DNA of 64,000 bases from positions 372,001-436,000 of the forward strand of contig MU062019.1 of assembly GCA_013265495.1 (NCBI GenBank), in the 5' to 3' direction. Both the position numbers and the translations under genes were made by a program. The notes under the pieces are model-generated. The model made no database searches. It worked only from the letters and a program-made list of their open reading frames with translations, and was not told the origin of the DNA. This DNA is from Vicugna vicugna. Lineage: Eukaryota. Below, one piece after another: positions 5,071 to 59,700 of the stretch (position 1 is the stretch's first letter; the number at the start of each line of letters is the position of its first letter).

Positions 5071-6579
5071 TGGGGCTGGTATTCTGTTTGCTTTGTGAAT
5101 GAGACGCTCGTTTACTCCCTGGGGGAGACAGTTCCCGCATAACAGGTTGAAGCCCTCGCGTGGCAGGTGCGGGGCTGGGGCACAGGGTGACGGCAGGATG
5201 CTGGGGACGAGATGTGAGGGTCCCGGGGGCGTGAGGCCCCTCGGTCTGGGACAGCCTGGCTGACGTGAGTCTCACCCGGGGTCGGTCCTTCAGGGTGGGG
5301 ACGGGCTCCTCGCAGGGAGGGAAGGTGCTGCCCCCCGGGAGGGGTTCCTCTCAGCGAGGCCACTGTGGTTTGACCTGGACGAGGACTTCTGAGAAGCAGC
5401 CACCAGGGGGCTCCCTGCTTCCACGCAAACGCCTTAGAGAACAGATCCCTGGGGGGCAGGGGTGGGGTTTGGTGGGGATGATGGAAGCCACACCCCATTA
5501 GGTCTCCACCTTGGGGAGGTCATCTTGACGTTGACATAAGACCAAGACTTGAGGGGGAGGCTGGGGGAGCGACGTGAAAACTCAGCATCAGAGAGCTGGG
5601 CGGGATCCCAGATGGAGCCCCCGCACCCCAACTCTGTCGTCTTAACTTTTAACATTTTCTGAAGGATGGGCAGCCCCCTCCCCATCGCACATGGGAGTTG
5701 ATGGGCTGAAACCAGGGTCTCTGGTTGTGTGTCCACGGAGGGGGGTATCTGGCAGGGAGGGTTTGGGTGCTTTGAGGGGGATGTGCGGTTTAACTTCAAA
5801 TTTAGTAGATTTTTGCCAGTGAATTTAACGTTCAGCTACTCCCGACTCCTAAGGTTCACGATAGCTGTGCCTCTGTGTGAATCCTGGACCCTGCAGGCCT
5901 GCGTGCGCGGCAAACCCCACGGACGTGTGCCCAGCACATGTGTCCTGGGACAGCTTTCTCTGCCCTGTTTCTTCAGGGCTTTTGTGGGGAAGATTGTTTA
6001 TAAACCCAGGATTTACAGGGGTCTCTGCCCTCTCCCGATGTCTCGGGTAGACGGAGAGTGGGTCCCACAAGTGTCCCCAGGAAGTTGGCGTCCCTCCAGG
6101 GCAGGTCCTCCAGCGGAGGATGCAGGGCAGCTCCCACACTGGCCTTCGCTCCCGCCGAGGGGTCTGACCCGCCCGCCGGCAGAGTCCCTGTGCCGCGGGA
6201 CAGCGCTGACCACCGGTCTCCAGGCGGACGGTGTCACAGCTGCGGGCCCGTCCACGTCCGCCAGATGGCCCTGGGTGACCCTGGTGAGTGCGTCTCCACC
6301 ACAGGTCACTGGCACAACCGTCCACCGATCCCTGGACCCTGAAACCCAGGCCCAAGGCCAGGTCTCCTGCATCTCCTGCATGAGACAAGGCAGCTTAGGG
6401 GGTTGGCCCCAAGGCAGTCTGAGCACACTGGTCTGTGACATTCCTCAGATAATTAGCGGCTTAGTCATGAACTGATTTTAAGCTGACAGGAGAGTGGAGA
6501 CCAGCCTAAACCCAGAATCACAGGGTTCGCAGGTCACAGCTGGGTTGGTGCCTAAGCCTCCCTCCCTCCACGGCCCTAG

Positions 6580-23421: not shown

Positions 23422-24522
<1,101 letters not shown>

Positions 24523-31770: not shown

Positions 31771-31977
31771 GCCCATGAGTCTGGCTGCACTGAGGGGGCT
31801 GCAGTAGTGCCTGGTCACGGCTGACGACTCCAGCAGCAGTAACTGCAGGGCCTAACTCATGTTCCTCCTCCTTGCGGCAGTACATGGGCAAACACCTTGC
31901 CTGCTATTTTAGAGGTTGCTTGCTTTGGAGGATGAATGCTCCTCCACCTTCTGGACACTGTCTTTCCAAACCTTTTA

Positions 31978-32265
<288 letters not shown>

Positions 32266-33346
32266 TTAGTGGCAGTGACGTCAAGAGCGGGTTCCACGCT
32301 ACCGCACGCTGCCTCACCCGTGACGTGACACGGAGACTCGCAGCCAGGGTCCGAGCAGGAGCGCAGCGTCAACGTGAAGCCACCCCCCACCCCGCAGCCC
32401 GCTTTCCTCTTACTCTCCCAGTCCCGGGCCACTTAGCTCACTCTGGGAAATAAATAGAACGGCCAAGTAAAATTCAGCGCTCAGGTCGATTCAAAACAGA
32501 ACTCATAGAAAACAAAGGCATGGTCTGGGCATCGGGAATTTACACACACTGGGGAACAAGGACCCCGAGGAAGGAGCGGGGCTGGGGAAGGGCTGGAGAC
32601 GCCCGCCCGGAGCGGCCCCGGGACCCGCTGCCCCAGCGCAGCGGCCTGAGACGACACGCTCGCCTGCATCACTCGGAGTTGGAGGACCCCGTCCTGTAGT
32701 TTGTTCCAACACAAATCACACGCGAGACAATGGTGTTCCTGTGCTCCAGGTAACTCATGTGGGAGAAGCCCTCCACTGGTAACACACTAAGGAGTCCAGA
32801 AGAGCGAGTGCCACGTCTCGGCCGGCCTCCGTCTGCCATTGCTCGGTAAGGAGCACGGGGTTCTCTGCCTGCAGCTGCCTCCCTCCTCCTCAGAGGTGCA
32901 CATCCCGAAACTACCACTTGTCTCAGCATCACGGCACTCGGCGGCTCGGGGACCCGTGCTAGGTCAGTCTCGCCACGGAACCACGTTTCATAAGCCCTTA
33001 AGCTTAACATTCAAGGCTCTGTAAAACCTAGAGTCAGATGAGCTTTCTCAGCTTTGTCTCTGCCTCACTTCCCAGGGGGACCCGAGTCTGACGAGTCTGC
33101 CCTCCTCCCCCGGGCGCGGCGTCACAGTGCCACCTCCAAGCCGCTTCTGTCCCCGCCGCCCCACACCACACCGCTCTCTGCCGACCCTGGGCGAGCCCCG
33201 CTCCCGCGGAGCCCGCCGGCCCACGTTCCTGACCCACAGTGACCTCTGCACCGGTATTAAACCATCCGCGCTCTGGGAAGCGAGGAACCCGCCACAGGCA
33301 CACGCTGAGTGTGTCCTGGTCCCACAGCTGCTACGGCTACTGGTCA

Positions 33347-39172: not shown

Positions 39173-39583
<411 letters not shown>

Positions 39584-47775: not shown

Positions 47776-49479
47776 TGCCAATTAAAATGATAAGCTGATT
47801 TAACTTCAAACGAATACACAGCAAAATAGGACAGAAACACTGACACTGTTCTTGGTTGACAGCAAGTGCAGGTCTGAGAGAATTCGGAGCTTCTGCTGCT
47901 AGGCCCTTTCTGGCAGGCAGCTGGGACTCCTGCCTATGAATAACTGCTGATAATGGGTAAGAGTGTGTCATAAGTGATTACATATTCTCCAGTGCCAAAT
48001 CCACGAAGGGTGTGGACTACAACAACCTGTTATCCCAGCTGGACAGACAAGTTAGAGTATCTGCTCCTGGTCAAAGGCTGCCAAGCGGGGGGTGGGGGGA
48101 GTGGGGGTGGTCCCTGGGGGACCAGAACCACTACGGCCCCTAGAGAACTCAGGAGAGTGAGGAAGAGGGTCCTGGGGACAAATCAATCACAGGATGGCAC
48201 CCTCCGTGCAATACAAACATGTTAGTGTAAGGACAGAGGGGGTGCAGAGAAGCAGGTACGTGTTTGAGGGACCAGGGATGTTGCAAGGGAAGTGATGCCT
48301 AGCCTGGGACCTGCAGGACCTACGGTTTACCAGGCAAACAGTGTCAGAACTTCCCATTTTGGTAAAGCTGGAAATGTGTACTTTTTGCACAATGATCTTT
48401 GACTTATCTCCCAAGACTGGAAGCCTCAGAGTCACACACCTGCAGTGGGAGAAGAAAACCAGCTCCCAGGGATACTACCGGGGGATCAAATGTAAGTGAA
48501 TTCAAAAGCACTTTAAAAATGCTGCGGCCATTTAAACAACCATTCCCAATTATTCTGACAGCTATCTGAGAGCAAGGGTTCTTTGTATCAGCACATAAAG
48601 CAAGTCTGCGTGTGACAATACAGAACAGAGCTGGGTACAAGGTACGTACTCTGTAAACACTTCTTTTTGTTTCACTACTTCCAGTTTGTGGACTAACAGG
48701 CCCCCTTTAGGCTTAGAACACCCGCAGCAACAATCCCTGTGACTGCAGGGATGCTGACGCTGTTGTCTGCAGGAGAACCATCAATGAACTTTTTTCCCTC
48801 TGCTTATCCAACCCAAGCCCATTCAAAGAAAAAACACATATAAAACATACCAATTTGCAAAGTTTAAGTTTAGAGCACCTCATTTTAGAGGGCTAGCTGT
48901 TAACCCGACAACGTGAGTACTTTTCACTTGCTTTATCATCCGGTTAGTCCTCTTGAGGGTTATACCTGAGAATGGACACATAACACATCAAACTCTTTCC
49001 CCCAGGAACCTCACTGTTACAAGAGGCTTTTAACAGCAGCACAGATCGAGAGGAATATCTGTCCTTTCAGAGTCCCTTGCAGGTGGCACAGTAATGCCCC
49101 GGTGTCCCCACGGAGACCTTCAGGGCAGTGCCAGGGAGTAAGTGTCACGGACCCCCAAACAAGCTGCTGGTCCTTGCACCTCTCAGCGTCGATGATTTCA
49201 TAGGAACTGCGGTGCTGCTCGGATGAAGGGCTTAGGCAAGACTCCTGGCCAAAAATTAAAAAAACCCAAAACAAAAAAACTCACAAACTCGCAAAGCAGA
49301 TCCCACCCGCTCGTTCAAAGTCAGAGTCCAACATTCAGAAGGGACAAAAGGTGAGGGATCAGAGCAAGGTAAGACGGGGAAATGGACGCAATGAAGAAAG
49401 TGCAGAGGCGTGGTGTAGGGCATTACGGAGCGGGAGACGGACGGAGACATCCAGGCTGCAGCAGGGCTTCGAGGAGCAA

Positions 49480-50460
49480 ACAAACGTCAGGAACGCAGGT
49501 GCTATCACTGCTGACCCCGCGGAGCGGCTGAGACCACTACCTCAAGGCCGGACCAAGGAGGTCCCAGGACTGACGCCCGTGGCTCCGTGTGGCCGGATCC
49601 CCCCGCACCCGCCGCGCGCCTGCAAGGCGCCCCCTCCCGGGGCCCGAGGCCGCCGGCCACATCACCAGACGGCCTTTGGAGCGGACAACGCCCACGAGCC
49701 GCGAGGTGAGGATGTCGGCCGAGCGCCGGCAGCCCCACCCCCAGGGCACGCGGGGCTCGGGCGGAGGGGCGGGTGAAGGCCCGGGGCCCGGGTGCTCCGG
49801 CGCTCGGAGGCCCGTCTCCGTCCGGACGCGCGCTCCAACCTGCCCGACCACGGGCCCCGGGGTCCGACGCCGCGAGCCGGGCCGGTGACCTTGACGCGGC
49901 GCCGGGCCGGAAGCGGGGCGCGCGCGCGCCGGACTCACCGTCCGCATGCAAAGTCGCTCCGCGGGGCCCGCGCGGCCGCCGGAAACGAGCAGCGGGGGCA
50001 GCCCGCGGGGCCGGCAGGCGCCCCGGCCCCACAGCAGCAGGCAGCGGTGCGCCATGGCCGCCGGCGGCCCCCTCGGACCGCGCCGGACGAGCAGGCGGCC
50101 TCGGATCGCCTGGCAGGCTAGAAGCAGCGGCCACGAGACGGCGCGCCCGCGACCCCACGCTCTCCTCGCCCCCGCCACGCCCCGGCGCGCTGACGTCAGC
50201 CGCACAGGGGCGTGTCCTCGCGCGCAGGAACGCGGCTCCGCCTCCGCTGCGTCCTCCCTTGGCCAGGGACAGAGGCGGGGCCTAAGGGGAGGAGCTCAGA
50301 GGCCGAGGGCGAGGCTGGAGGCGGGCCTAGCGGGGGACTTGGAGGCGATGTGGGCGGAGCTGAGGGTGGGGCTAAGGGAGGGGCGGGGCCGGGCGCGTGC
50401 GGCTGCGCTGGAACGGCTGGAGCACGGGAGGGCCTTGCAGAGGTGCTTGAGACCCGACAT
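49480..50460 (-). promoter_or_regulatory. AFG3L2 CpG-island promoter with a CRE and GC boxes
   Basis: CpG-dense; palindrome GCTGACGTCAGC at 50189-50200; GGGCGGGG at 50381; TATA-less. Confidence 0.8.
49939..50055 (-). CDS. AFG3L2: AFG3L2 exon 1
   Basis: [39 protein letters not shown]|gtgagt; 117 nt. Confidence 0.93.
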
Positions 50461-50519
50461 ATGACTCCTTTTCCTCAGCGCGGAGGCCATCTTCCACACT
50501 TTTGGTCTCTCTCGGTAGG

Positions 50520-50660
50520 TCCTTCGTCAAATACTTTATTGAGCGTCCATTCCTTGGCGCCGTCTCTGTGGCAGGCTCCGTCCGTCCTAGGCTCTGGAAG
50601 AGCCGAGAACGAACAGCCCTGATCTCTCAGAGAGCAGTGCAAGTGTCACAACCACGGAGC
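50520..50660 (-). mobile_element. Probable L2 3' end fragment
   Basis: caaatactttattgagcg...ctaggctctgg resembles the L2 tail. Confidence 0.45.
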
Positions 50661-50664
50661 CTAG

Positions 50665-53550
50665 GGAGACAGTGACGCCGTCAGGAGCCCTGCGACGCGG
50701 CGTGCTTACTCATTGACATTGACATCGACAGCTCTGAAGCGGGGAGGGCGTGGCCTGTGACGTAGGGACCCTGGGGAGGAGGGCGTGGCCTTGACGTCAT
50801 GGACCTGGGGACTGGGATGGCGCAGACTGTGACGTCAAGAAGCCTGAGACGAGGCTGGCGCACACAGTGACACCAGCAATTCTGAGACGGGGAGGGCGTG
50901 GCCTGTGAAATCGGGGACTCTGGGAGGATGGAGCGTGGCCAATGACGTCAGGGACCCTGAGACAGGACGGCGCAGACTGTGACGTCAGGAGGCCTGCGAC
51001 TGGACCGGTGTAGAATGACATCAGGAAGCTGGCCATGGAGAAGGAAGACTGTGATGTTGGGAACCCTTTCACAGGGAGGGTGTAGACTGAGATCAGGAAC
51101 ACTGCGATGGGACGGGTGTAGACTGTGACGGGGAGAGTGCAGACTGACGTCAGGAACCCTGCGACTGATGGCCCGGGCTGTGAGGTCAGAAACCCCGGGA
51201 AGCGGAGGGTGAAGACTGTGACCTCGGGAACCCAGCGACAAAGAGGGCGAAGTGTGTGATGTCATGAACCCTGTTATGAGAATGGTGCAGACTGCGACAT
51301 TAGGAACATGTTGTGGGGAAGGCGCACACTGACGCCAGAGACTGCGACTGAGGACGCAGCTGTGACGTCATGAACTCTGATCTGGTGGGTGTAGACTGTG
51401 ACCTCAGGAACTCTGCGACTGAGGGCGCAGGTTGTGACGTACACAACCCTGCGACCAGGTGAGCATAGCCTGTGACGTCATGGACTCAGACGGAGGACGC
51501 AGCTGTGACAACAGGGCCTCTGCGACTGAGGACTCAGGCTGTGACCTCAGGAACCCCGTGACAGTGAGGGCAAAGTGAGTGATGTCACGAACCATGTTAC
51601 GATGAGGGTGTGTGAAGGAAAAGCTGGGCTGGGCCTACTCGTAAATCGAAGTTTAACAAGTGTCGGATTACTGACCTGAGTTTTGCTGGCCTAACTCATA
51701 AATCTGTGTGTTGGTTTGCTCATTCCCTCCTCACGTTTTTTTTTTGCTAGTCAGGTAAATTTTCAGAGAGACATATCTGGCCTTGGAATGTCAGTTTGCT
51801 GCCTCCCTGACTGCTTTTGTGATAATGATGCTGCTCAGGGTGTTCCATGCCTATTGGCGAATACCCCTAGCTTGTAATTAACTCTATAAAACCTCATGCA
51901 CACGTTTTGGAGGTGCTCAGAGCTTCGGAGCAGAAGCCCCTCTGAGCCCAACGGCATAATAAATCTGAGTACTCCAACCTTCCGAGTGGTGCTTGTTTCT
52001 TGGCTGGTCTGTCGTTTCCGTAACAGGTGCAGACTGCGACGTTAGGAACGTGTTGCGGGAGGGCACACACTGAAGTCTATGACTCTCAGAAAACCCGAGA
52101 AGAGAAGGGCCAAGACTGTGACCTGAGGAACCCAGCGACAGGGAGGGCGAAGTGAGTGATGTTGCAAACCCTGTTATGAGGAGGGTGCAGACTGCGAGGT
52201 TAGGAATATATTGCTGGGAGGGCACATACTGTGACATGATGGACTGTGAGACTGAGGACGCAGGTGTGATACCATGGACTCTGCGACTGACGGCGCCTGC
52301 TGTGATGTCATGACCGCGACAGATTGGTCTCAGGATGTGACGTCATGGGCTGTGCGACGGGGCTCAGTTTGTGGCGTACAGAGCCCTGCGACCCAGTGGG
52401 CGCAGGCAATGACGTCATGGAGTCGGCTATTGAGGACGCAGCTGTGACTACAGGGCGTCTGTGACTTAGGACGCAGGCTGTGATGTCAGGGCTTCTGTGA
52501 CTGAAGACGCAGGCTTTGACAGGGAGGGCGACCGAGAGGGCGAAGTGTGTGATGTCATGAACCCTGTTATGAGGAGGGTGCAGAATGCAACAGTTAGGAA
52601 CATGTTGTGGGGATGGCGCACACTGTGACGTCAGGGGCTCTGCGACTGGGTGGGCAAGGCTATGACGTCATAGAGTCTGCGACTGAGGTCGCAGCTGTGA
52701 CAACAGGGTCTCTGTGACTGAGGACATAGGCTGTGACCTCAGGAACCCAGCGACAGGGAGGATGAAGTGTGTGATGTCACGAACCCTATTATGAGGAGAG
52801 TGCAGACTGCAACGTTAGGAACATGTTGCGGGGAGGGCACACACTCTGGCGTCAAGGACTCTGAGACGTGGTGGGCGCAGGCTATGACATCATGGCATCT
52901 GCGACTGGGTGGGCGCAGGTGTGATGTCAGGTACTGTGCGACTGAGGACGTAGTGGTGATGTCATGGACTCTGCGACTGGGTGGGCGCAGGCTGTGATGT
53001 CAGGGACTCTGCGACTGAGGACGCAGGCTGTGACGTCAAGGACTCTGCGACTGAGGGCTCAGGTTGTGACGTACACAATCTTGAGACCGAGTGGGCGCTG
53101 AATGTGATGTCAGGGACTCTGCGACTGAGGACGCAGGTTGTGGCGTTAGGGATTCTGCGACCGCGTGGGCGCATGCTGTGATGTCAGGGACTCTGCGACT
53201 GAGGATGCAGATGGTGGCGTCATGACTCTGCGACTTAGAGCGCAGGCTGTGACGTACAGAACCCTGTAACCAAGTAGGCGCAGGCTGTGACGTCAGAAAG
53301 CCTAGGACGATAAGGGCTAAGACTGTGACCTCAGGAACCCAGGGACAAGGAGGGCGAAGTGTGTGATGTCACCAACCCTATTATGAGGAGGGTGCAGTCT
53401 GCGACGTTAGGAACTGTTGCAGGGAGGGCGCACACTCTGACGTCAGAGACTCTGCGACTGGGGACGCAGCTGTGACGTCAGGACCCTGGGATGGGAGGAT
53501 GCAGGCTGTGAACTTTGACGGTGAGGGTGTGTAGTGACGTTAGGAACCAG
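50665..53550. repeat. Complex minisatellite of ~35-40-bp subunits rich in TGACGTCA
   Basis: Recurring units like CTGTGACGTCAGGGACTCTGCGACTGAGGACGCAGG; at least 15 perfect TGACGTCA counted by hand. Confidence 0.9.
51611..52025 (+). mobile_element. Solo LTR (class I/ERV1-like), 415 bp, with 4-bp TSD GGTG
   Basis: TGTGAAGG...CCGTAACA termini; GGTG at 51607-51610 and 52026-52029; TATAAA at 51885; AATAAA at 51958; the array unit resumes across the insertion. Confidence 0.88.
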
Positions 53551-54519
53551 GCCCACAGCAGGTAAAACTGTGTGGGGTCAGCCTTGCCTTGAGAGAAACT
53601 TCTGCCCCCAGACATGCTGGGGTAACAGGGCGACTCCTTGTGACCGTATTGCAGAGGGAGGTTGGCTCTGGACCTTGTGTGTTGTGCCTGTGTGGCTGTG
53701 GAGCCTCCTTGTCTGCTTCTGTGGTTACCTCAGTCTGACCAGCGGTATTGACGTCGTGCCGCGGGTTTTGTGAGCAGCTGCGGGTACTACCCCCGCTCAA
53801 CCAGAAGGTCCAGGTCTGGCCTGTGGTCGAGAACGAAATTTGCTAGTGAGGCCAGAGAAGTACAGGGTCCTTGTAAAGCATCCGTCGTATTTTAGGATAA
53901 TTTCTCAAGGTCTGGCGTGAGATTCTGTAGACTGGTTTCATGGTTTATGAAACCTTCCCCTGGGACCCCCAGTCTGAGAGCAACCCCACTCCTGCCAGGC
54001 TGGGTCCTGGTGCCCTTTAAGTCAGGGCCAGGTGACATTACGAATGGTCATACCTGGGCTCCTGGAACTTGGCCGGCCTAGCGTGCATTGCGCACAAAGT
54101 GGGCTTTATCTAAGCAAGGACAGGCCAGAGCCTGTCCCGGGGAAGGGACAGAGGACTTGGGGGTGTTCTGATGAGACAGCTGATTCACTCTTGGGCCGCA
54201 GAAGATCCGGCACCCGGGGTGGGGGGGTGCAGGCGTGGTGCACTTCTGAGGAGCTGAACCACCTCCGAAAGCAGCCAGCCCGAGGCGGAGTGTCCTTGCA
54301 GTGTGGGAAGCGAGGCCCGCCTGCACAGCGGGGCCACTGGGGGATTCGTGCCTAGTGGCTTTTACCTGGCCCCCCCTGCCTTAGGCGGGCCATATGCTAA
54401 ACACCTGGCAGCTGGCGTCTTCCCTCCCCACTGAGCGCACCTCCTGACTGATTCCTGTGCGTATTCAGTGAGTTGGTTCAGAGGGAGTGAACCTGGGGGG
54501 CACATAAATCGAGGGGCGA

Positions 54520-54888
54520 TGGTGTCACCGGAGAGCAAAGTTTTGTCTCATCACAGAAGGAATGCAGAGACGAGACGTGGAGATGAAGAAAGCAGAGCGA
54601 GGGTTTATTGCGATAGCACACTCGGAGTGGTGAGCCACTGCCCTGAGTTACACGGGGTGGAAAATGAACGGGGGGGATATTCACGGGGAGGGAGGGGCCT
54701 GCGGTCGTGTTCCCTGATTTTCATCCCGCTGCACCTTCTGGAGGAAGGGAGGCCAGGAGGGATTTCTGTCCTTGTTTAGTCTGGATCGAACGTATCTCGG
54801 CCTCGGCACATGATGGGCACTTCTCGTTTAGGAGGCTGATCGTGTTAAAATGAGGGCATAATGAGCAAAAGGTTACATTCGGACACCA
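54520..54888 (-). mobile_element. Probable second LTR
   Basis: Terminal inverted repeat TGGTGTC...GACACCA; AATAAA on the minus strand at 54604-54609; flanks GCGA/GAGA (3 of 4 match). Confidence 0.55.
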
Positions 54889-55299
54889 GAGATTCTGGCC
54901 TTTTCCCACCTTTTTCTGCCTCTGAGACCCCTGTCACCTCAAGACATATGACGTCTTGTCAGTCCGGAGGTTCTTGCTTTTCTTTGTCTGCCCAGGGAGC
55001 CCTGTTTAGCAGATGTGTGGCTTCCTGCCGCCTGGTGGTGCTCCTTTTTCTGCTCCTGTCTGGCCGCATGCCAGTTCTAACAGTGGAAGAGGCACTGGTC
55101 AGAGTCCAGAGCAGCCCCAGGGTGTTCCTGCAGGTCCCTGCCTTGGGTGGGGGCAGGGCAGGTGCGTTAGGGGCGGGGTATAGGAGGGGCAGGTGTAGCA
55201 GACCTGTCAGCCCAGGTGAGAATGAGGGGGTTGTTCTCAGGGTAAAACGTAACAACTTTAATCCATAAATGTCACTTTGAGGGTGGGGGTGACCGATCC

Positions 55300-58200
55300 A
55301 GCACGGGGACAGGTTCTGTCCGTGGGCTGTGATTTACTGTTGTGTTAAGTCCCCGCTCCGCCTGGCGGCTGTAAGAGGGGAGCAGACAAGGAAGAACAGA
55401 CGGCAGCGGCCACGTGTGCTACTCGCAGTATTAATGTCCCCAGCGCCCAGCAGGGACGGGGAGGGGGCTTGGCAAAACAGCAGAAGCCAGGTAAGGCCAG
55501 CTGCTAAGTCTGTCCCTGACGTGACTCACCTACTGGTAAGTTTGTCCTTTTGAAAGTAACGTAAGGTCTGTGACAGGTTCCAGGTGTACCGAGTGTCTTC
55601 ACTCAGGTAAGGTGAACCCAGGGGGTCATGCCCTGTGATTTTAAGGCAGAACGAGGAGTCAGGATCACTAGTTAAGGTCCTGTCCACCTGGGTCTCCCTG
55701 GTCCTGTGGATTTCCAGCCTTCCATGTTCTCAAACCCAGACCTCAGGGGAGAGAGGATGTAAAACCGCGTCAGGAGGGGAAGGCAGCTCCGGGTTCCCCT
55801 GGGCGTCTTTCAGTCGGACCCCCCCCCACCAAGGCTGGCCGTGCAGCTGGTCCTTCGGGGGTGGCTCTCCGTACATGAGCGCGTGTGGACTGAGCCTGTG
55901 CTTTCCTGTGGGGGCAGAAGGGAGAGCCGGGGCTGATGGCTCTCTTGACGTAGTTTGTTGGAGTTTGTTTTGAGGGTTCGATGTGTTCTTGCTGCTTTTC
56001 CTGAGGGTTGTGGTCTCCACATGGCATATACACCCCGTTTGTTATTAGGGCTCTGGAGACTCCCTTAGTAACTTGGGGAGCAAAGCTGGGCTGCTGTCAC
56101 TCTGGATGGACTTGGGGAGCCCAAGCTGAGGGGCTGTTTCCTTGGGCGGGGCCTTAGAGACCCCCAGACAGTCTCAGTTCAGGTGGGGGTGCCTCCATCC
56201 AGCAGGAGCGGCTGTCAAAAACAGCAAGTATCTGAAACTTCCTTGCGCCCAGGGCATTACTGTAAAATTGGCTTGCCAGACTGGACCTGCATGTATGCCT
56301 CTCTCTGTACTGTTGTTTCCTCTTATTCTTTCTGCTTCTCGCTTTTGGTGGCCTCGGCAGTGATAACCTCCTTTGGCAGGAATACAGCTTCCAGCAGCCA
56401 CATGGGTTTCCCACTGCTTTTAATCTGTTTATGCCCTGAGGTCAGCATTCCCCTCTCCCTGCAGATGGCCCCACGAGTGTAGTGTTGAACAGGCACATTT
56501 AGAGCCATGCAGATAGTTCTGGGGGCCTGATTAGGGCAGTTAGCTTGGCCTCCTGGGCAGAACAGGCAGCCCCCTTCTGTGACGGAAACCACCCTGTATC
56601 CTGCCTTCAGCAACTCCCGTCGGTGGACTGTTCAGCTCTGCATTCTGTACAGGGGAGCTCTCTGGGGCGGGCCTGCTGGCGTGAACCTGCTCCATGACTC
56701 CCTCACGGCCGCGTCTGGGGTCGCAGGGACGTCACAGACGGGTGTCTAGAAGCACGCCTTGGACATGCAGGGTTCGCCAGGGGACAACTGGTCTGGCTTC
56801 TCTCCTAATGAGGGGCTGGAGGTGGCGGGGGTCCGGACGGTCAGGGGCTGTCCCAAAGCTAATTCGTTAGCCTCTGGGAGGTGCTGGGAGGCAGCGGCTG
56901 CAGCCGCAAGCATGGAGGCCTCCTTCAGCGCTTGGCCCGGTTGCTTAGGAAGACAGGCCCGAGTCAGAGGCCCCAGTTTTGTGTGAGCCCCACGCAGACG
57001 AAGGGGCGGCTCAGGCTGCGAAGGTAACGCAGGGGCTCACGAGCTGGTCTTTCAGTTCCAGGAGCGGCCGGTCACAACTGGGGGTCCACGCGAAGTGGTC
57101 AGGGTCCTTCCCTTTTAGCTGTTCATACGAGGGCTTAGCCTTTAAGCCAAAGCTGGGGAACCGCGGACAGCAGAGCCCGGCGCCCTGCCTGCTGAGGGAG
57201 GGCTGGGCTTCTTCCTTGAAACGTTCTATCCCGCCTCAGCTGGATGGCTTAAGGGGTCAGCTGTGCTCAGAAAGCTCGCTGGTGGGGCTGGGGGCTCGAA
57301 TGTCTTCCACACGTCGAGGTACAGACCTTGTTCTAACTGCAGGCGATCAAAGCCCTCGGCTGAAAGCTTTCCTCGGAGGGCGGGGAGCTTTTTACACCCC
57401 TTGGGAGGATATTCCAGAGCTCAGGGCGCACAAAAGAAGGTGTCCTTTAAACCCAGCCCTGAGTACCAGGTCCTCTCAGGGACTCGGGTGGAAAGCCAGG
57501 GGCAGCTGGGGACCAGGGGGTGAGTCTCCTCAGTGGCTTCAGTTTCGGCCGGAGGTCCTGAGCTGGCTGGTGCTCCCACTGGCTCCTTTCCTGGGGGCAG
57601 GCGTGCTGACGGGGCTGGGTGTCTAAGGAGCCATGGTTCGAGCAGGCTTTCTGTTCTGGGGCTAATGCCTGCTGGGCCTCCTTGCTTAAGGCCTCTCGTT
57701 TGTTATCTGGGTGCTGGTGACCGGGTCACAGCTTGACTACGACTGGTGGTGCCCCTGGCCCTACGCCTGGTGGTGTCAGAGGCCCACGCTGACACTGACG
57801 GACTAACCCCTCAAGGTTACGTGGGCTGTTATTGTCAGTGGAGGGCGCAGCGCTGGGGCTGCAGGATGGAGGGGAGTGGGGTGTTCCGATGGTCAGGGTT
57901 TTGTCTTAGGGGTAGGTTGTGGCTCCCAGTTTGTATAATGTCTCTTCCTATTAGGGGAATCGGGCATTTGGGACACATAAGAGAGTGAGATGACACTTTC
58001 CCTTCCAAGTCGCACTCAAGGGGCTCCAGAAAACTGTGCCCCTGGGGCTTCTCTTCCACTCCCTGTGTCTTACACTTACCTTTGGGCATTCTGCCGTCGG
58101 GTGTTCAAGACCGAGGAGGTGGCCAACCTTCTCGCCCCCTGTGGTCAGGGTCAGCCGAGGCTCCTCGGGGGTAAGTTCCAGGGTTCTCCGAGGAGGCCCT

Positions 58201-59700
58201 GGGCCCCTCCAGTCCTCCTCTTCTTCCTTGTGTGAGAGGTGGCCAGGACACGCAGTCCACTTAGCTTCCTCTCAGACGTCTGGAGACACCTCTGCCAGTG
58301 GCCCTGCTGTGTGCAGTGTGCACACTGATGGCTCTGAGGGCCTCTCTCCACTGCAGGTGTGGTCTCTGAATCCTGGGGACACTCCTCGATGTTGCAGTGG
58401 CAGGAGTGGGGGCCCCATCAGCCAGGAAGTGGGTGTGCTGGGCCCTAGCTCCAACCTCTGTAAGTTTCTCCTAAAGTCTGGGGCGCTCTGGGAATGAAAC
58501 GGGACTGAAGAATGGCCTGCCCTTCTGCTGACTCTGGGCTCACGTTTGTGCACACCCAGAGGCACTCCCTGGGGCTCTCGGGGAAGGCCGAGGGATTTTC
58601 CTTCCATCCTTGGTTGGCTCCCTGAACCCTGCTCCAACTTCAGGGTTTCTTCCTGGCCGACTGAGTGTCCTTGAGAGTCAGACGGCTGAAACGTGTGAGG
58701 CGCTGCTTTCTTCCCGATGGCCCCACCCAGTGTCGGTGTCGGGAACGACCTGGCCTCCAGGCTGGTCTGCAGCGTGCCCTGGACCTTTTCCATTTGTTTT
58801 CTCAGGTCCCTCCCTTGCAGTACTTAAAATCAGTGCCTTCTCTTCCCTGGAGAGCAGGATGTTGAGGAGGGTTAGGCCGCACGCCCAAGTGGGGAAATGG
58901 GTGTGCAGTATTCCTCAGTCGAAATCAAGGACTCGCTCGGGTTCCCCCCCACCCCAAACCCTCAGATGGACCCTTCCAGTCGTACAGCTCTGAGGATGAG
59001 AAGGGTGCGGGCACAGTGGCCAGCCACCTCTCCACTGGGGGCCTCCCGACCCCAGAGTGCTGGTGCTGAGCGCCGCTGTGGGTGGGGGTGCGCTGGACCT
59101 GTCCCTGGGTCGAGAGATGGGGGTGGGAGAGCTGGGGAGGGGCCCTCCTGTCGGGAGGAGGTGAGTGTGAGGGAGGAGAGGTCGGGTAGATGTGAGTGAA
59201 CCGTCGGAAGGGGGAGCGGCTGCCCCCTGGGGAAGGAGGAAGTGGAGAGGACCCTCAGGCTGAGATGCAACACCAGGGAGTGAGATCTGAACTAGCCTCG
59301 CGTTTCTTACCGAGGCCCTTGTTTTGGCAAAGCACCATGAAAAACTGGGTAGGAGGGCTCTCCTCCCATTTTTTCAAGTGCTGGCGATAGAGGTCCAAGT
59401 GAAAAGTGACACTATAATTCAGGGAGCCGTCGGTTAGCCAGCTTTCTGCATCCGCCAGCTTGTACTGGCCACGCGGTGACGCGGAGGGAAGCAGGCTGGC
59501 CGTACTGGCGCGGGGCTCCCGGTACCGACTGCGTGCGCTCGTGGCAGGCTTGCTGGGTAGAGGCTTGGCTGTTGGGATAGACTCCTTATTTCTAGTCTGC
59601 TTTCTTTTCTTTTTTTCTTTCTTTTTTTATTGTTGTTGCTTTTTTAGTGGGCTTTGTTTGGATTTGGATTTGGGTTTTGAAAAAGAGCGTCTAGACAACA
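55300..59700 (-). mobile_element. Degenerate class I (gamma-like) endogenous retrovirus, gag-pro-pol internal region
   Basis: Collinear motifs across frameshifts: MA, CA, NC knuckle CAHCTQQGHWQRC, PR CPIPLIGRDII, RT WYSGLGLKDTFFC, RNase H GAICRERGMLTSG and HCRGHQK, IN GLPKSIQSD and WRPQPSGK. Outer boundaries are uncertain. Confidence 0.85.

What the first reader, a model, noticed from the sequence alone, without database searches (positions are those of the whole stretch)
50665..53550. A ~2.9-kb array of CRE/ATF palindromes directly upstream of the AFG3L2 promoter
Seen: perfect TGACGTCA at 50792, 50830, 50943, 50980, 51145, 51363, 51473, 52338, 52410, 52626, 52663, 53031, 53288, 53438 and 53473. 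An 8-mer is expected far less than once per 3 kb by chance. The proximal units pair it with GGGCGTGGC (Sp/KLF-type box; around 50746, 50781, 50894). The array begins about 600 bp from the ATG. Established: TGACGTCA binds CREB/ATF1 and binding is blocked by CpG methylation. Inference: this may be a repeat-built homotypic enhancer, or a methylation-gated CREB/ATF sink, for a mitochondrial quality-control protease. I do not recognise it as a named satellite family.
Basis: partly seen in the sequence, partly recalled or inferred. Interest (0 to 1): 0.76.

Follow-up and report, generated by a model that had tools for sequence, protein, structure and literature searches.

The report
Camelid-only CRE minisatellite upstream of AFG3L2
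The cluster of 15 perfect cAMP-response elements upstream of AFG3L2 is real, but it is an old, decaying, single-locus tandem repeat found only in camelids, which grew in place from one short promoter-upstream segment and shows no sign that its CRE motifs are kept by selection.

Summary
There are 15 perfect TGACGTCA sites at the stated coordinates, against 0.62 expected in the whole 64 kb. They sit in about 67 degenerate 37-bp units (50667-53550), 612 bp from the AFG3L2 ATG.

The excess comes from shared descent, not independent motif gain. The array is single copy in three DNA runs. It is present and colinear in Camelus (about 95% identical, 11 CREs shared). It is absent upstream of AFG3L2 in warthog, buffalo, sperm whale, cheetah and pangolin.

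In whale and buffalo the two flanks of the array lie about 10 bp apart around one GC-box plus CGTCAGGAACC segment. The first and last units of the array both match that segment, so the array arose by tandem duplication in place. A solo LTR (51612-52025) splits it and predates the split between Camelus and the window's lineage.

CRE positions change between the two camelids at the same rate as the rest of the array. Six of 17 ancestral sites were lost, four by CpG transitions at the central CpG. CpG decay is island-like only in the first ~250 bp and intermediate further out.

The one deeply conserved CRE is the core-promoter site at 50191. An enhancer or sink role is untested and unsupported. 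This is a new member of a known kind, of modest interest.

The parts
49939..50055 (-). AFG3L2 exon 1 coding part (39 codons, ATG at 50055, GT donor just below 49939)
   Evidence: Translation reads [39 protein letters not shown]. Downstream AAA and M41 exons carry [13 protein letters not shown] and RPGRFD. The exon at 39179-39448 is 97% identical to mammalian AFG3L2 fragments.
49301..50920 (.). Promoter CpG island, which runs into the first ~7 units of the array
   Evidence: GC 0.70, CpG o/e 0.91, 179 CpG. The CpG transition fraction against Camelus is 0.04-0.06 up to 50920.
50174..50198 (.). Core-promoter GC/KLF box (50174-50182, minus strand) plus a canonical CRE (50191-50198), about 140 bp upstream of the ATG. 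This is the evolutionarily conserved CRE.
   Evidence: A perfect CRE sits at the same distance in Camelus, warthog, buffalo, sperm whale and pangolin, and cheetah has TGACGTTA there. Window 50179-50202 matches pangolin 24 of 24.
50451..50603 (.). Proximal unique flank, orthologous in sperm whale, buffalo and warthog
   Evidence: blastn and local alignments: window 49713-50603 matches L004 9484-10339.
50667..51611 (+). Proximal part of the ~37-bp minisatellite, with 7 perfect CREs. The first units carry GGGCGTGGC boxes.
   Evidence: TRF, unit HMM, CRE positions, colinear with Camelus at ~95%.
51612..52025 (+). Solo LTR-like insertion (TG...CA, AATAAA, GGTG on both sides) that interrupts one unit
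   Evidence: Sequence reading. Logan word depth is 35,000-80,000 against 8-24 in the array and flanks, and many contigs end at 52025. It is present at the same place in Camelus at 94.5%.
52026..53550 (+). Distal part of the minisatellite, with 8 perfect CREs and irregular higher-order blocks
   Evidence: TRF, the repeat finder families D1-D8, self-blast blocks 65-83% identical. Whole-unit indels against Camelus of +74, -38 and -74.
53537..53624 (.). Distal unique flank. It begins inside the last unit (CGTTAGGAACCAGGCCCACAGCAGG) and is orthologous to the sequence that in sperm whale lies ~10 bp from the proximal flank.
   Evidence: Window 53538-53624 matches L004 9384-9474. Seed alignment.

Best explanation
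This is a camelid-specific, single-locus, ancient and degenerate minisatellite. It holds about 67 units of ~37 bp, roughly 2.5 kb of repeat, plus a 414-bp solo LTR that landed inside it.

It was born in place, about 550 bp upstream of the AFG3L2 ATG, by tandem duplication of a local segment. That segment carried a GC box and a CRE half-site: GGGCGG..CCGTCAGGAACC in whale, TGCCGTCAGGAACC in buffalo. Once the octamer had become the full palindrome TGACGTCA in the camelid stem lineage, amplification copied it many times. Later block duplications built an irregular higher-order structure.

Since then the array has mostly decayed like neutral DNA. Units are now about 58% identical. CRE cores mutate at the array's background rate, and their central CpG is being lost by methylation-linked transitions.

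Only the promoter-proximal ~250 bp (about 7 units, 2 perfect CREs) behave as part of the unmethylated CpG island. The rest shows intermediate CpG decay.

What is shown: the anatomy, single-copy status, lineage restriction, in-situ origin, and the lack of motif-level constraint.

What is inferred: any CREB/ATF binding is limited to the unmethylated proximal units and adds at most modestly to a promoter that already has a deeply conserved CRE at about -140. The distal units are largely inert.
For: Anatomy:
- TRF periods and unit HMM.
- GC skew of 0.25-0.32 on the + strand inside the array.

Single copy:
- Word depth in the array is 7-13 (X1), 15-42 (X3) and 7-14 (X6). That equals the flanks, while the LTR insert reaches 35,000-80,000.
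- There are no other units in the 64-kb window.

Lineage restriction:
- Camelus has the array: 56 unit hits, 13 perfect CREs in the array (14 perfect sites in the upstream 11.5 kb with the promoter CRE), colinear at ~95%.
- Warthog, buffalo, sperm whale, cheetah and pangolin have no unit hits in the 10 kb upstream and keep only the core-promoter CRE.

In-situ origin:
- In sperm whale the sequences orthologous to window 50603 and 53538 are ~10 bp apart.
- The single-copy sequence there matches both the first and the last unit of the array.

Age:
- The LTR and the unit order are shared with Camelus.
- Block copies differ by 10-15% at non-CpG-type sites, against 2.8% between the orthologous arrays.

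No motif constraint:
- Core non-CpG positions 6/228 against 51/1795 elsewhere (p=1). Core CpG transitions 4 to 15 conserved against 21 to 84.
- 11 of 17 sites are retained in both lineages (65%). That is what the array-wide rates predict, about 57-67% by my arithmetic.

Methylation gradient:
- CpG transition fraction is 0.05 in the island, 0.06 in 50451-50920, 0.12-0.36 in the rest of the array (0.17 over the whole array) and 0.30 in the flank. Array against flank p=0.004, array against island p=0.001.

Literature:
- CREs act mainly within ~150 bp of the TSS, and TGATGTCA is the deamination product (PMC1796609).
- CREB1 binds in vivo almost only unmethylated CpG-island CREs and is blocked by methylation at CREs in repeats (PMC9729108).
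Against: - CpG decay in the distal array is only about half that of the flank (0.17 against 0.30). CpG o/e stays at 0.63-0.80 after tens of millions of years. Something has kept the array partly protected from germline methylation, and factor binding is one possible cause.
- Eleven perfect CREs persist in both camelid lineages, and all six of the most proximal ones are intact in both (Fisher p=0.04).
- The constraint test has low power: about 6 substitutions expected in the cores. It excludes strong constraint only.
- The array's internal divergence is larger than a simple clock allows for an origin after camelids split from other artiodactyls, so the history is not fully understood.
- No methylation, accessibility, ChIP or usable RNA data were available.
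Confidence: 0.7

Rival explanations
1. The array is a functional homotypic CREB/ATF enhancer, or an extension of the promoter. Unmethylated units recruit CREB/ATF/CREM dimers cooperatively and make camelid AFG3L2 more strongly or more cAMP/stress-inducibly expressed.
For: - 15 canonical palindromes in the window and 13 in Camelus, 11 of them shared.
- The proximal units pair the CRE with GGGCGTGGC boxes and lie inside the CpG island, with island-like CpG stability.
- The distal array shows reduced CpG decay relative to the flank (p=0.004).
- CREB1 can activate repeats through a CRE when they are unmethylated (PMC9729108).
Against: - No excess conservation of CRE positions over the rest of the array.
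- 6 of 17 sites were lost in one lineage, four of them at the central CpG.
- The array lies 470 bp to 3.3 kb from the core-promoter CRE, outside the ~150-bp zone where CREs are concentrated (PMC1796609).
- It is absent from five other mammals, whose AFG3L2 promoters keep only the single core CRE.
- No RNA or chromatin evidence is available. The RNA-labelled run X16 covers intron, intergenic DNA and the array at similarly low depth.
Confidence: 0.17
2. The array is a methylation-gated CREB/ATF sink. It titrates bZIP factors away from other targets when unmethylated.
For: Many high-affinity sites at one locus. CREB1 binding is methylation-sensitive in vivo.
Against: - It is a single-copy locus with only 15 perfect sites. 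From my own recollection, a mammalian genome has on the order of 10^4 full CREs and far more half-sites, so 15 sites cannot change free factor concentration appreciably.
- The sites are decaying at a neutral rate.
Confidence: 0.02
3. The array is a copy of a dispersed satellite, or the internal VNTR of a transposable element that was inserted upstream of AFG3L2.
For: A high-copy LTR-like element lies inside it. Many TEs carry internal tandem repeats.
Against: - Array word depth equals the single-copy flanks in three DNA runs.
- There are no other units in the 64-kb window or in the 43-kb camel locus outside the orthologous array.
- Both ends of the array match the same single-copy ancestral sequence seen in whale and buffalo, which is the signature of in-situ duplication.
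- The LTR interrupts one unit and has its own 4-bp duplication, so it arrived after the array.
Confidence: 0.03
4. The array has a structural or epigenetic role that does not depend on CREB. One version is a G-skewed tandem tract that extends the CpG-island shore and forms R-loops with promoter-upstream antisense transcription. Another is a boundary between AFG3L2 and upstream chromatin.
For: Strong GC skew of 0.25-0.32 on the + strand, which would be the non-template strand for divergent transcription. Intermediate CpG decay. Weak-CGI composition in patches.
Against: No evidence of a stable transcript and no Rfam family. GC skew is a common property of GC-rich minisatellites, so it needs no special explanation. 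The array is absent in other mammals.
Confidence: 0.08

Closest known systems
GC-rich minisatellites / VNTRs near promoters that multiply a transcription-factor site (e.g. MNS16A at the hTERT antisense promoter with GATA-1 sites, PMC5438627; genome-wide expression-associated VNTRs, PMC8096271)
   Same: - Head-to-tail units of tens of bp in a kilobase-scale array.
- GC-rich with strand asymmetry.
- Each unit carries a factor-binding motif.
- Located next to a promoter.
- Length changes occur in whole units.
   Different: - This array is old and degenerate: units are ~58% identical with no recent homogenisation.
- Only three unit-scale indels separate the two camelid lineages.
- Within-species copy-number variation and any effect on expression are untested.
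- The motif is the canonical CRE palindrome. I found no described CRE minisatellite in the literature searches.
Canonical promoter CREs bound by CREB/ATF (positional bias within ~150 bp of the TSS; PMC1796609)
   Same: Identical octamer TGACGTCA. CpG-decay variants TGATGTCA and TGACATCA appear exactly as described for orthologous CRE turnover.
   Different: - The array sites lie 0.6-3.4 kb from the ATG.
- They are not conserved outside camelids and show no constraint.
- The AFG3L2 site that fits the canonical pattern is the single core-promoter CRE at 50191, conserved across the Laurasiatherian species examined (perfect in five of the six comparison species; cheetah has TGACGTTA).
CRE-bearing repeats silenced by DNA methylation (IAPLTR1/1a and CREB1; PMC9729108)
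   Same: Repeated DNA that carries perfect CREs, whose potential activity depends on the methylation state of the central CpG.
   Different: Those are dispersed retrotransposon LTRs with one CRE each. This is a single-locus tandem array derived from host promoter-upstream sequence. Its methylation state is only inferred from CpG decay.

Membership tests
Minisatellite / VNTR | Head-to-tail tandem units of about 10-100 bp forming an array of 0.5 kb or more | tested here: met
   TRF periods of 35-38 bp with multiples of 74, 110 and 150 bp. 61 unit hits, all on one strand, between 50667 and 53550.
Minisatellite / VNTR | GC-rich with purine/pyrimidine or G/C strand asymmetry | tested here: met
   GC 0.56-0.61 and GC skew +0.25 to +0.32 in the array, against ~0.1-0.15 in the distal flank.
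Minisatellite / VNTR | Length change by whole units between alleles or species | tested here: met
   Window against Camelus: +74, -38 and -74 bp inside the array. The 38-bp difference was also seen in a contig of run X16. Variation within a species was not testable, because short-read contigs break inside the array.
Dispersed satellite DNA | Many copies or arrays at multiple genomic loci (high copy number) | tested here: not met
   Summed word depth in the array equals the single-copy flanks in X1, X3 and X6, while the inserted LTR reaches 35,000-80,000. This applies to copies at least 90% alike.
TE-internal VNTR (SVA- or LTR-type) | Array flanked by TE sequence and target-site duplication, with no ancestral homologue at the empty site | tested here: not met
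   The empty site in sperm whale and buffalo holds a single unit-like seed that matches both terminal units. The only TE present interrupts a unit and came later.
CREB/ATF-responsive cis-regulatory element | Canonical CRE (TGACGTCA) or half-site present | tested here: met
   15 perfect sites and 23 one-mismatch cores.
CREB/ATF-responsive cis-regulatory element | Position close to the TSS (most functional CREs lie within ~150 bp; PMC1796609) | tested here: not met
   The nearest array CRE (50792) is 737 bp from the ATG and ~600 bp from the core-promoter CRE. Only the site at 50191 fits.
CREB/ATF-responsive cis-regulatory element | Evolutionary constraint on the motif relative to neighbouring sequence | tested here: not met
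   Core against non-core substitution rates are equal between the two camelids. 6 of 17 sites were lost. The array is absent outside camelids. Power is limited.
CREB/ATF-responsive cis-regulatory element | Unmethylated central CpG in vivo | tested here: inconclusive
   Tested only by proxy. CpG decay is island-like up to 50920 and intermediate beyond: 0.17 against 0.30 in the flank and 0.05 in the island. No bisulfite data.
CREB/ATF-responsive cis-regulatory element | Factor occupancy and cAMP-inducible activity | not testable with these tools
   No ChIP, ATAC or reporter data. The RNA-labelled runs were uninformative.
CpG island | GC of 0.55 or more, CpG o/e of 0.6-0.65 or more over at least 300 bp, and slow CpG loss | tested here: inconclusive
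   Clearly met for 49301-50920, which includes the first ~7 units. Patches at 51061-51400, 52161-52620 and 52741-53360 meet the composition thresholds but lose CpGs about 3 times faster than the island.

The most novel reading that the evidence does not exclude
The array is a lineage-specific, repeat-born extension of the AFG3L2 CpG island. It has been kept partly unmethylated for tens of millions of years because CREB/ATF/CREM dimers occupy its palindromes in the germline. In camelids it gives this mitochondrial m-AAA protease gene extra basal or cAMP/stress-inducible transcription. That would be an example of a new regulatory module created in one step by tandem duplication of a promoter-upstream GC-box/half-CRE segment.
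Probability: 0.13. Interest if true: 0.55.

Novelty: new member of a known kind. Interest (0 to 1): 0.3.

Why it matters
As it stands, this is an ordinary event with a well-documented history. A local 37-bp promoter-upstream segment was amplified into a 2.5-kb array in one mammalian family, multiplying a high-affinity transcription-factor site about 15-fold next to a housekeeping mitochondrial protease gene.

It is a clean natural example of how tandem duplication can create a homotypic binding-site cluster in one step. The empty ancestral site is still visible in whales and ruminants, and two diverged camelid lineages allow decay to be measured. Here the decay looks neutral at the motif level, with only partial protection of CpGs.

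If camelid methylation, ChIP or reporter data later showed binding and copy-dependent activity, it would become a useful model of enhancer birth from a minisatellite. Without that, it should not be read as an AFG3L2 regulatory adaptation.

Tried and rejected
**Dispersed satellite or TE-derived array.** Rejected on read depth and on the empty-site comparison.

**Per-position conservation among the 47 aligned units.** The TGA..TCA positions are the most uniform at 0.81-0.98. The unit HMM was seeded on perfect-CRE units, so the alignment is anchored on the core. I did not use this as evidence of selection and relied on the orthologous camel-window comparison instead.

**RNA evidence.**
- Both run searches returned only RNA-labelled runs that hold a fifth or so of the words.
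- The one laid, X16, is a ~4% diverged relative. It shares the Camelus 38-bp deletion and covers intron, intergenic DNA and the array at similarly low depth.
- This does not show transcription. No run that was clearly RNA and of the window's own organism label held the stretch. The four organism-B holders (share 0.74-0.93) are of unstated library kind.

**Further loci.** Dromedary, Myotis and Phyllostomus AFG3L2 look-ups found no gene on record.

**Rfam.** No family matches 49000-55000.

**Literature.** Searches for a CRE minisatellite, or for CREB control of the AFG3L2 promoter, found nothing specific.

**Earlier scan notes.** Nothing at this place. Elsewhere in the genome there are only unverified first-reader titles.

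**Proximal units as a copy of the core-promoter box+CRE module.** The order and spacing of the box and the CRE differ, and the whale and buffalo seed explains the unit better.

**Global alignment of one overlapping block pair (fifth pair).** Meaningless, because the two ranges overlap. Ignored.
Full report
**1. Observation**

The 64-kb window holds 17 sites, against 0.62 expected from dinucleotide-preserving shuffles. The two extra ones are at 50191 and 32276.

Tandem Repeats Finder reports periods of 35-38 bp and multiples of 74, 110 and 150 bp between 50733 and 53511. A profile HMM built from the units finds them only between 50667 and 53550, all in one orientation, and nowhere else in the window.

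A further 23 in-phase cores differ from the palindrome by one base. Ten of these are TGATGTCA or TGACATCA, the products of CpG deamination, and four are TGACCTCA.

GGGCGTGGC boxes are at 50746, 50781 and 50894 as stated, plus one on the minus strand at 50174.

The gene is AFG3L2 on the minus strand:
- The ATG is at 50055, reading [14 protein letters not shown]....
- Exons with [14 protein letters not shown] and HEAGH lie further down.
- An exon at 39179-39448 is 97% identical to mammalian AFG3L2 fragments, and full-length hits are named AFG3L2.

The array therefore begins 612 bp from the ATG.

**2. Anatomy**

The 2.9 kb is not uniform. Positions 51612-52025 are an inserted element that begins TG and ends CA. 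It carries AATAAA, is flanked by GGTG on both sides, and interrupts one unit. In three DNA runs its summed word depth is 35,000-80,000, so it is a high-copy dispersed element, most simply a solo LTR.

The repeat proper is about 2.47 kb, or about 67 units. The units are very diverged:
- Mean pairwise identity of 47 full units is 58%.
- Irregular higher-order blocks are 65-83% identical.

The + strand is G-rich, with GC skew of 0.25-0.32. CpG o/e is 0.63-0.80 in the array, about 1.0 in the promoter island and 0.40-0.45 in the distal flank. A 1.6-kb CpG island at 49301-50920 covers exon 1, the promoter and the first ~7 units.

**3. Single locus, not a satellite**

Logan contigs of three DNA runs with three organism labels cover the array with near identity. 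Summed word depths equal those of the unique flanks: 7-13 against 7.7-8.6, 15-42 against 17.6-24.4, and 7-14 against 7.7-11.9. At 90% likeness or better the array is therefore single copy.

**4. Comparative evidence**

I obtained orthologous AFG3L2 loci with 10 kb of upstream sequence through the protein route. The species were Camelus (assembly GCA_048773025.1), warthog, water buffalo, sperm whale, cheetah and pangolin.

The window is about 95% identical to Camelus across 10.5 kb. It is therefore a camelid other than Camelus, probably a South American one, which is my inference.

Camelus has the array:
- 56 unit hits and 13 perfect CREs in the array (14 perfect sites in the upstream 11.5 kb with the promoter CRE).
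- The same unit order, and the same LTR at the same place at 94.5%.
- The only length differences inside the array are +74, -38 and -74 bp, which are whole units.

The five non-camelids have no unit hits in the 10 kb upstream. Warthog, buffalo, sperm whale and pangolin have a single perfect CRE, the core-promoter site about 140-200 bp upstream of the annotated gene start. Cheetah has TGACGTTA there. Window 50179-50202 is identical to pangolin over 24 nt.

**5. Origin in place**

In sperm whale, window 49713-50603 aligns to L004 9484-10339 and window 53538-53624 aligns to L004 9384-9474. The two flanks of the array are therefore about 10 bp apart there.

The sequence at that junction is GCTAGGGCGGCCGTCAGGAACCGGACCCACAGCAGGTGAAAA. 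Buffalo has GGCGGTGCCGTCAGGAACCCGGCC. The first array unit (..CTAGGGAGACAGTGACGCCGTCAGGAGCC..) and the last (..GTAGTGACGTTAGGAACCAGGCCCACAGCAGGTAAAA) both match this single-copy segment.

That is the signature of tandem duplication of local sequence, not of an imported element. The seed already held a GC box and the CRE half-site CGTCA. Buffalo's TGCCGTCA is one substitution away from the palindrome. Cheetah and pangolin serve as outgroups without the array, so a gain in the camelid stem lineage is the more parsimonious history.

**6. Is the CRE under selection?**

I aligned window 49001-59525 to the Camelus orthologue.

| Measure | CRE cores | Rest of array |
|---|---|---|
| Non-CpG differences | 6 of 228 (2.6%) | 51 of 1795 (2.8%), p=1 |
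| CpG: transitions to conserved | 4 to 15 | 21 to 84 |

Of 17 sites perfect in either species, 11 are perfect in both. Four were lost in Camelus and two in the window's lineage. Four of the six losses are CpG transitions at the central CpG. By my arithmetic, array-wide rates predict 57-67% joint retention, and 65% is observed.

There is thus no motif-level constraint, though the test can exclude only strong constraint. The count of 15 perfect sites among ~67 units fits neutral decay. It also fits amplification of already mutated variants: TGACCTCA and GTGTGATGTCA recur in successive higher-order blocks.

**7. Methylation proxy**

The fraction of CpG sites that differ by a transition between the two camelids is given below.

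| Region | CpG transition fraction |
|---|---|
| Promoter island | 0.05 |
| 50451-50920 | 0.06 |
| 50921-51400 | 0.17 |
| Rest of the array | 0.12-0.36 |
| Whole array | 0.17 |
| Distal flank | 0.30 |
| LTR | 0.5 |

The array differs from the flank (p=0.004) and from the island (p=0.001). All six CRE losses lie at or beyond 51473 (p=0.04).

The first ~250 bp therefore behave as part of the unmethylated island. The rest has been partly, but not fully, protected from germline methylation.

**8. Mechanism**

Two papers bear on this:
- CREB1 occupies CREs almost only in unmethylated CpG-island promoters and is excluded by methylation, including at CREs in repeats (PMC9729108).
- CREs are concentrated within ~150 bp of the TSS, and TGATGTCA is their deamination product (PMC1796609).

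Taken together, the most likely picture has three parts. The conserved site at 50191 is the working AFG3L2 CRE. The few island-embedded proximal units may add binding sites. The distal ~2 kb is a decaying by-product.

A sink role is quantitatively implausible for 15 sites at one locus. This rests on my recollection that a mammalian genome holds on the order of 10^4 full CREs.

**9. What remains unexplained**

- Block copies differ by 10-15% at non-CpG-type sites, against 2.8% between the orthologous arrays. Units are only 58% identical. On a simple clock the array would be as old as, or older than, the camelid stem, yet it is absent from all non-camelids examined. Possible causes are a mutagenic early phase, amplification of already diverged multi-unit blocks, or alignment noise. 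None of these was tested.
- The cause of the partial CpG protection is unknown.
- RNA data were uninformative, and no Rfam family matches.

**10. Known or new**

I found no description of this array, or of any CRE minisatellite. In kind, it belongs with promoter-proximal GC-rich minisatellites that multiply a factor site, such as MNS16A (PMC5438627, listed).

First-reader notes from the same scan list other motif-bearing minisatellites in this genome, including a 246-bp CRE-palindrome array elsewhere (s1-240354). These notes are unverified. If they hold, they suggest such arrays are not rare in this genome.

Verdict: a real and well-characterised feature, a new member of a known kind, with modest interest.

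Noticed in passing
window 51612-52025; L001 8018-8435 and L001 ~5995-6408: A solo LTR-like element (TGTGAAGG...CCGTAACA, AATAAA, 4-bp GGTG duplication) sits inside the array. It has a very high genomic copy number, with word depth 35,000-80,000. Camelus shares this copy and also has a second copy, specific to Camelus and in the opposite orientation, with ACAC on both sides. That copy lies at the position equivalent to window 53677. The family was therefore active both before and after the split between Camelus and the window's lineage.
   Followed up: partly
window 50174-50202: The core-promoter module is a GC/KLF box followed by a canonical CRE, about 140 bp upstream of the AFG3L2 ATG. A perfect CRE is at the same place in Camelus, warthog, buffalo, sperm whale and pangolin (24 of 24 nt identical to pangolin). 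Cheetah has TGACGTTA. This is the likely functional CRE of the gene.
   Followed up: partly
window 54713-54900 and beyond: Another very high-copy dispersed element starts near 54848, with word depth 8,000-18,000 and many contigs ending at 54848 and 54895. It was not identified.
   Followed up: no
window 32276-32283: One more perfect TGACGTCA lies inside the AFG3L2 gene body, just upstream (on the minus strand) of the HEAGH exon ORF. It sits in a weak CpG-island-like stretch at 31961-32540.
   Followed up: no
runs X15-X19 and X25-X35; window 52965-53004: Runs labelled 'reproductive system metagenome' or 'mammal metagenome' RNA hold this locus at only about 0.15-0.27 of words. A contig of the one laid, X16, is ~4% diverged and carries the same 38-bp unit deletion as the Camelus assembly. 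The host is therefore Camelus-like. Even coverage of intron and intergenic DNA suggests genomic DNA or nascent RNA in the library.
   Followed up: partly
window 50667-53550 (internal comparison): The array's internal divergence looks too old for an origin after camelids split from other artiodactyls. Units are 58% identical, and blocks differ by 10-15% at non-CpG-type sites, against 2.8% between the camelid orthologues.
   Followed up: partly
window 23790-24010 and 24020-24481: Two runs of N (221 and 462 bases).
   Followed up: no
L001 and L004 record coordinates: The AFG3L2 locus lies 0.72-0.76 Mb from the start of the 33-Mb Camelus chromosome record. In sperm whale it lies 26-73 kb from the end of the chromosome record. 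It is thus near a chromosome end, a setting known to be rich in GC-rich minisatellites. TUBB6-like tubulin lies tail-to-tail downstream of AFG3L2 in all six comparison loci.
   Followed up: no
same genome, other windows (scan notes s1-240354, s1-236610, s1-236618, s1-246787 and others): First-reader notes list several other minisatellites in this genome whose units carry functional-looking motifs: another CRE-palindrome array of 246 bp, NF-Y boxes, STAT sites and splice donors. The notes are unverified and I could not see their sequences.
   Followed up: no
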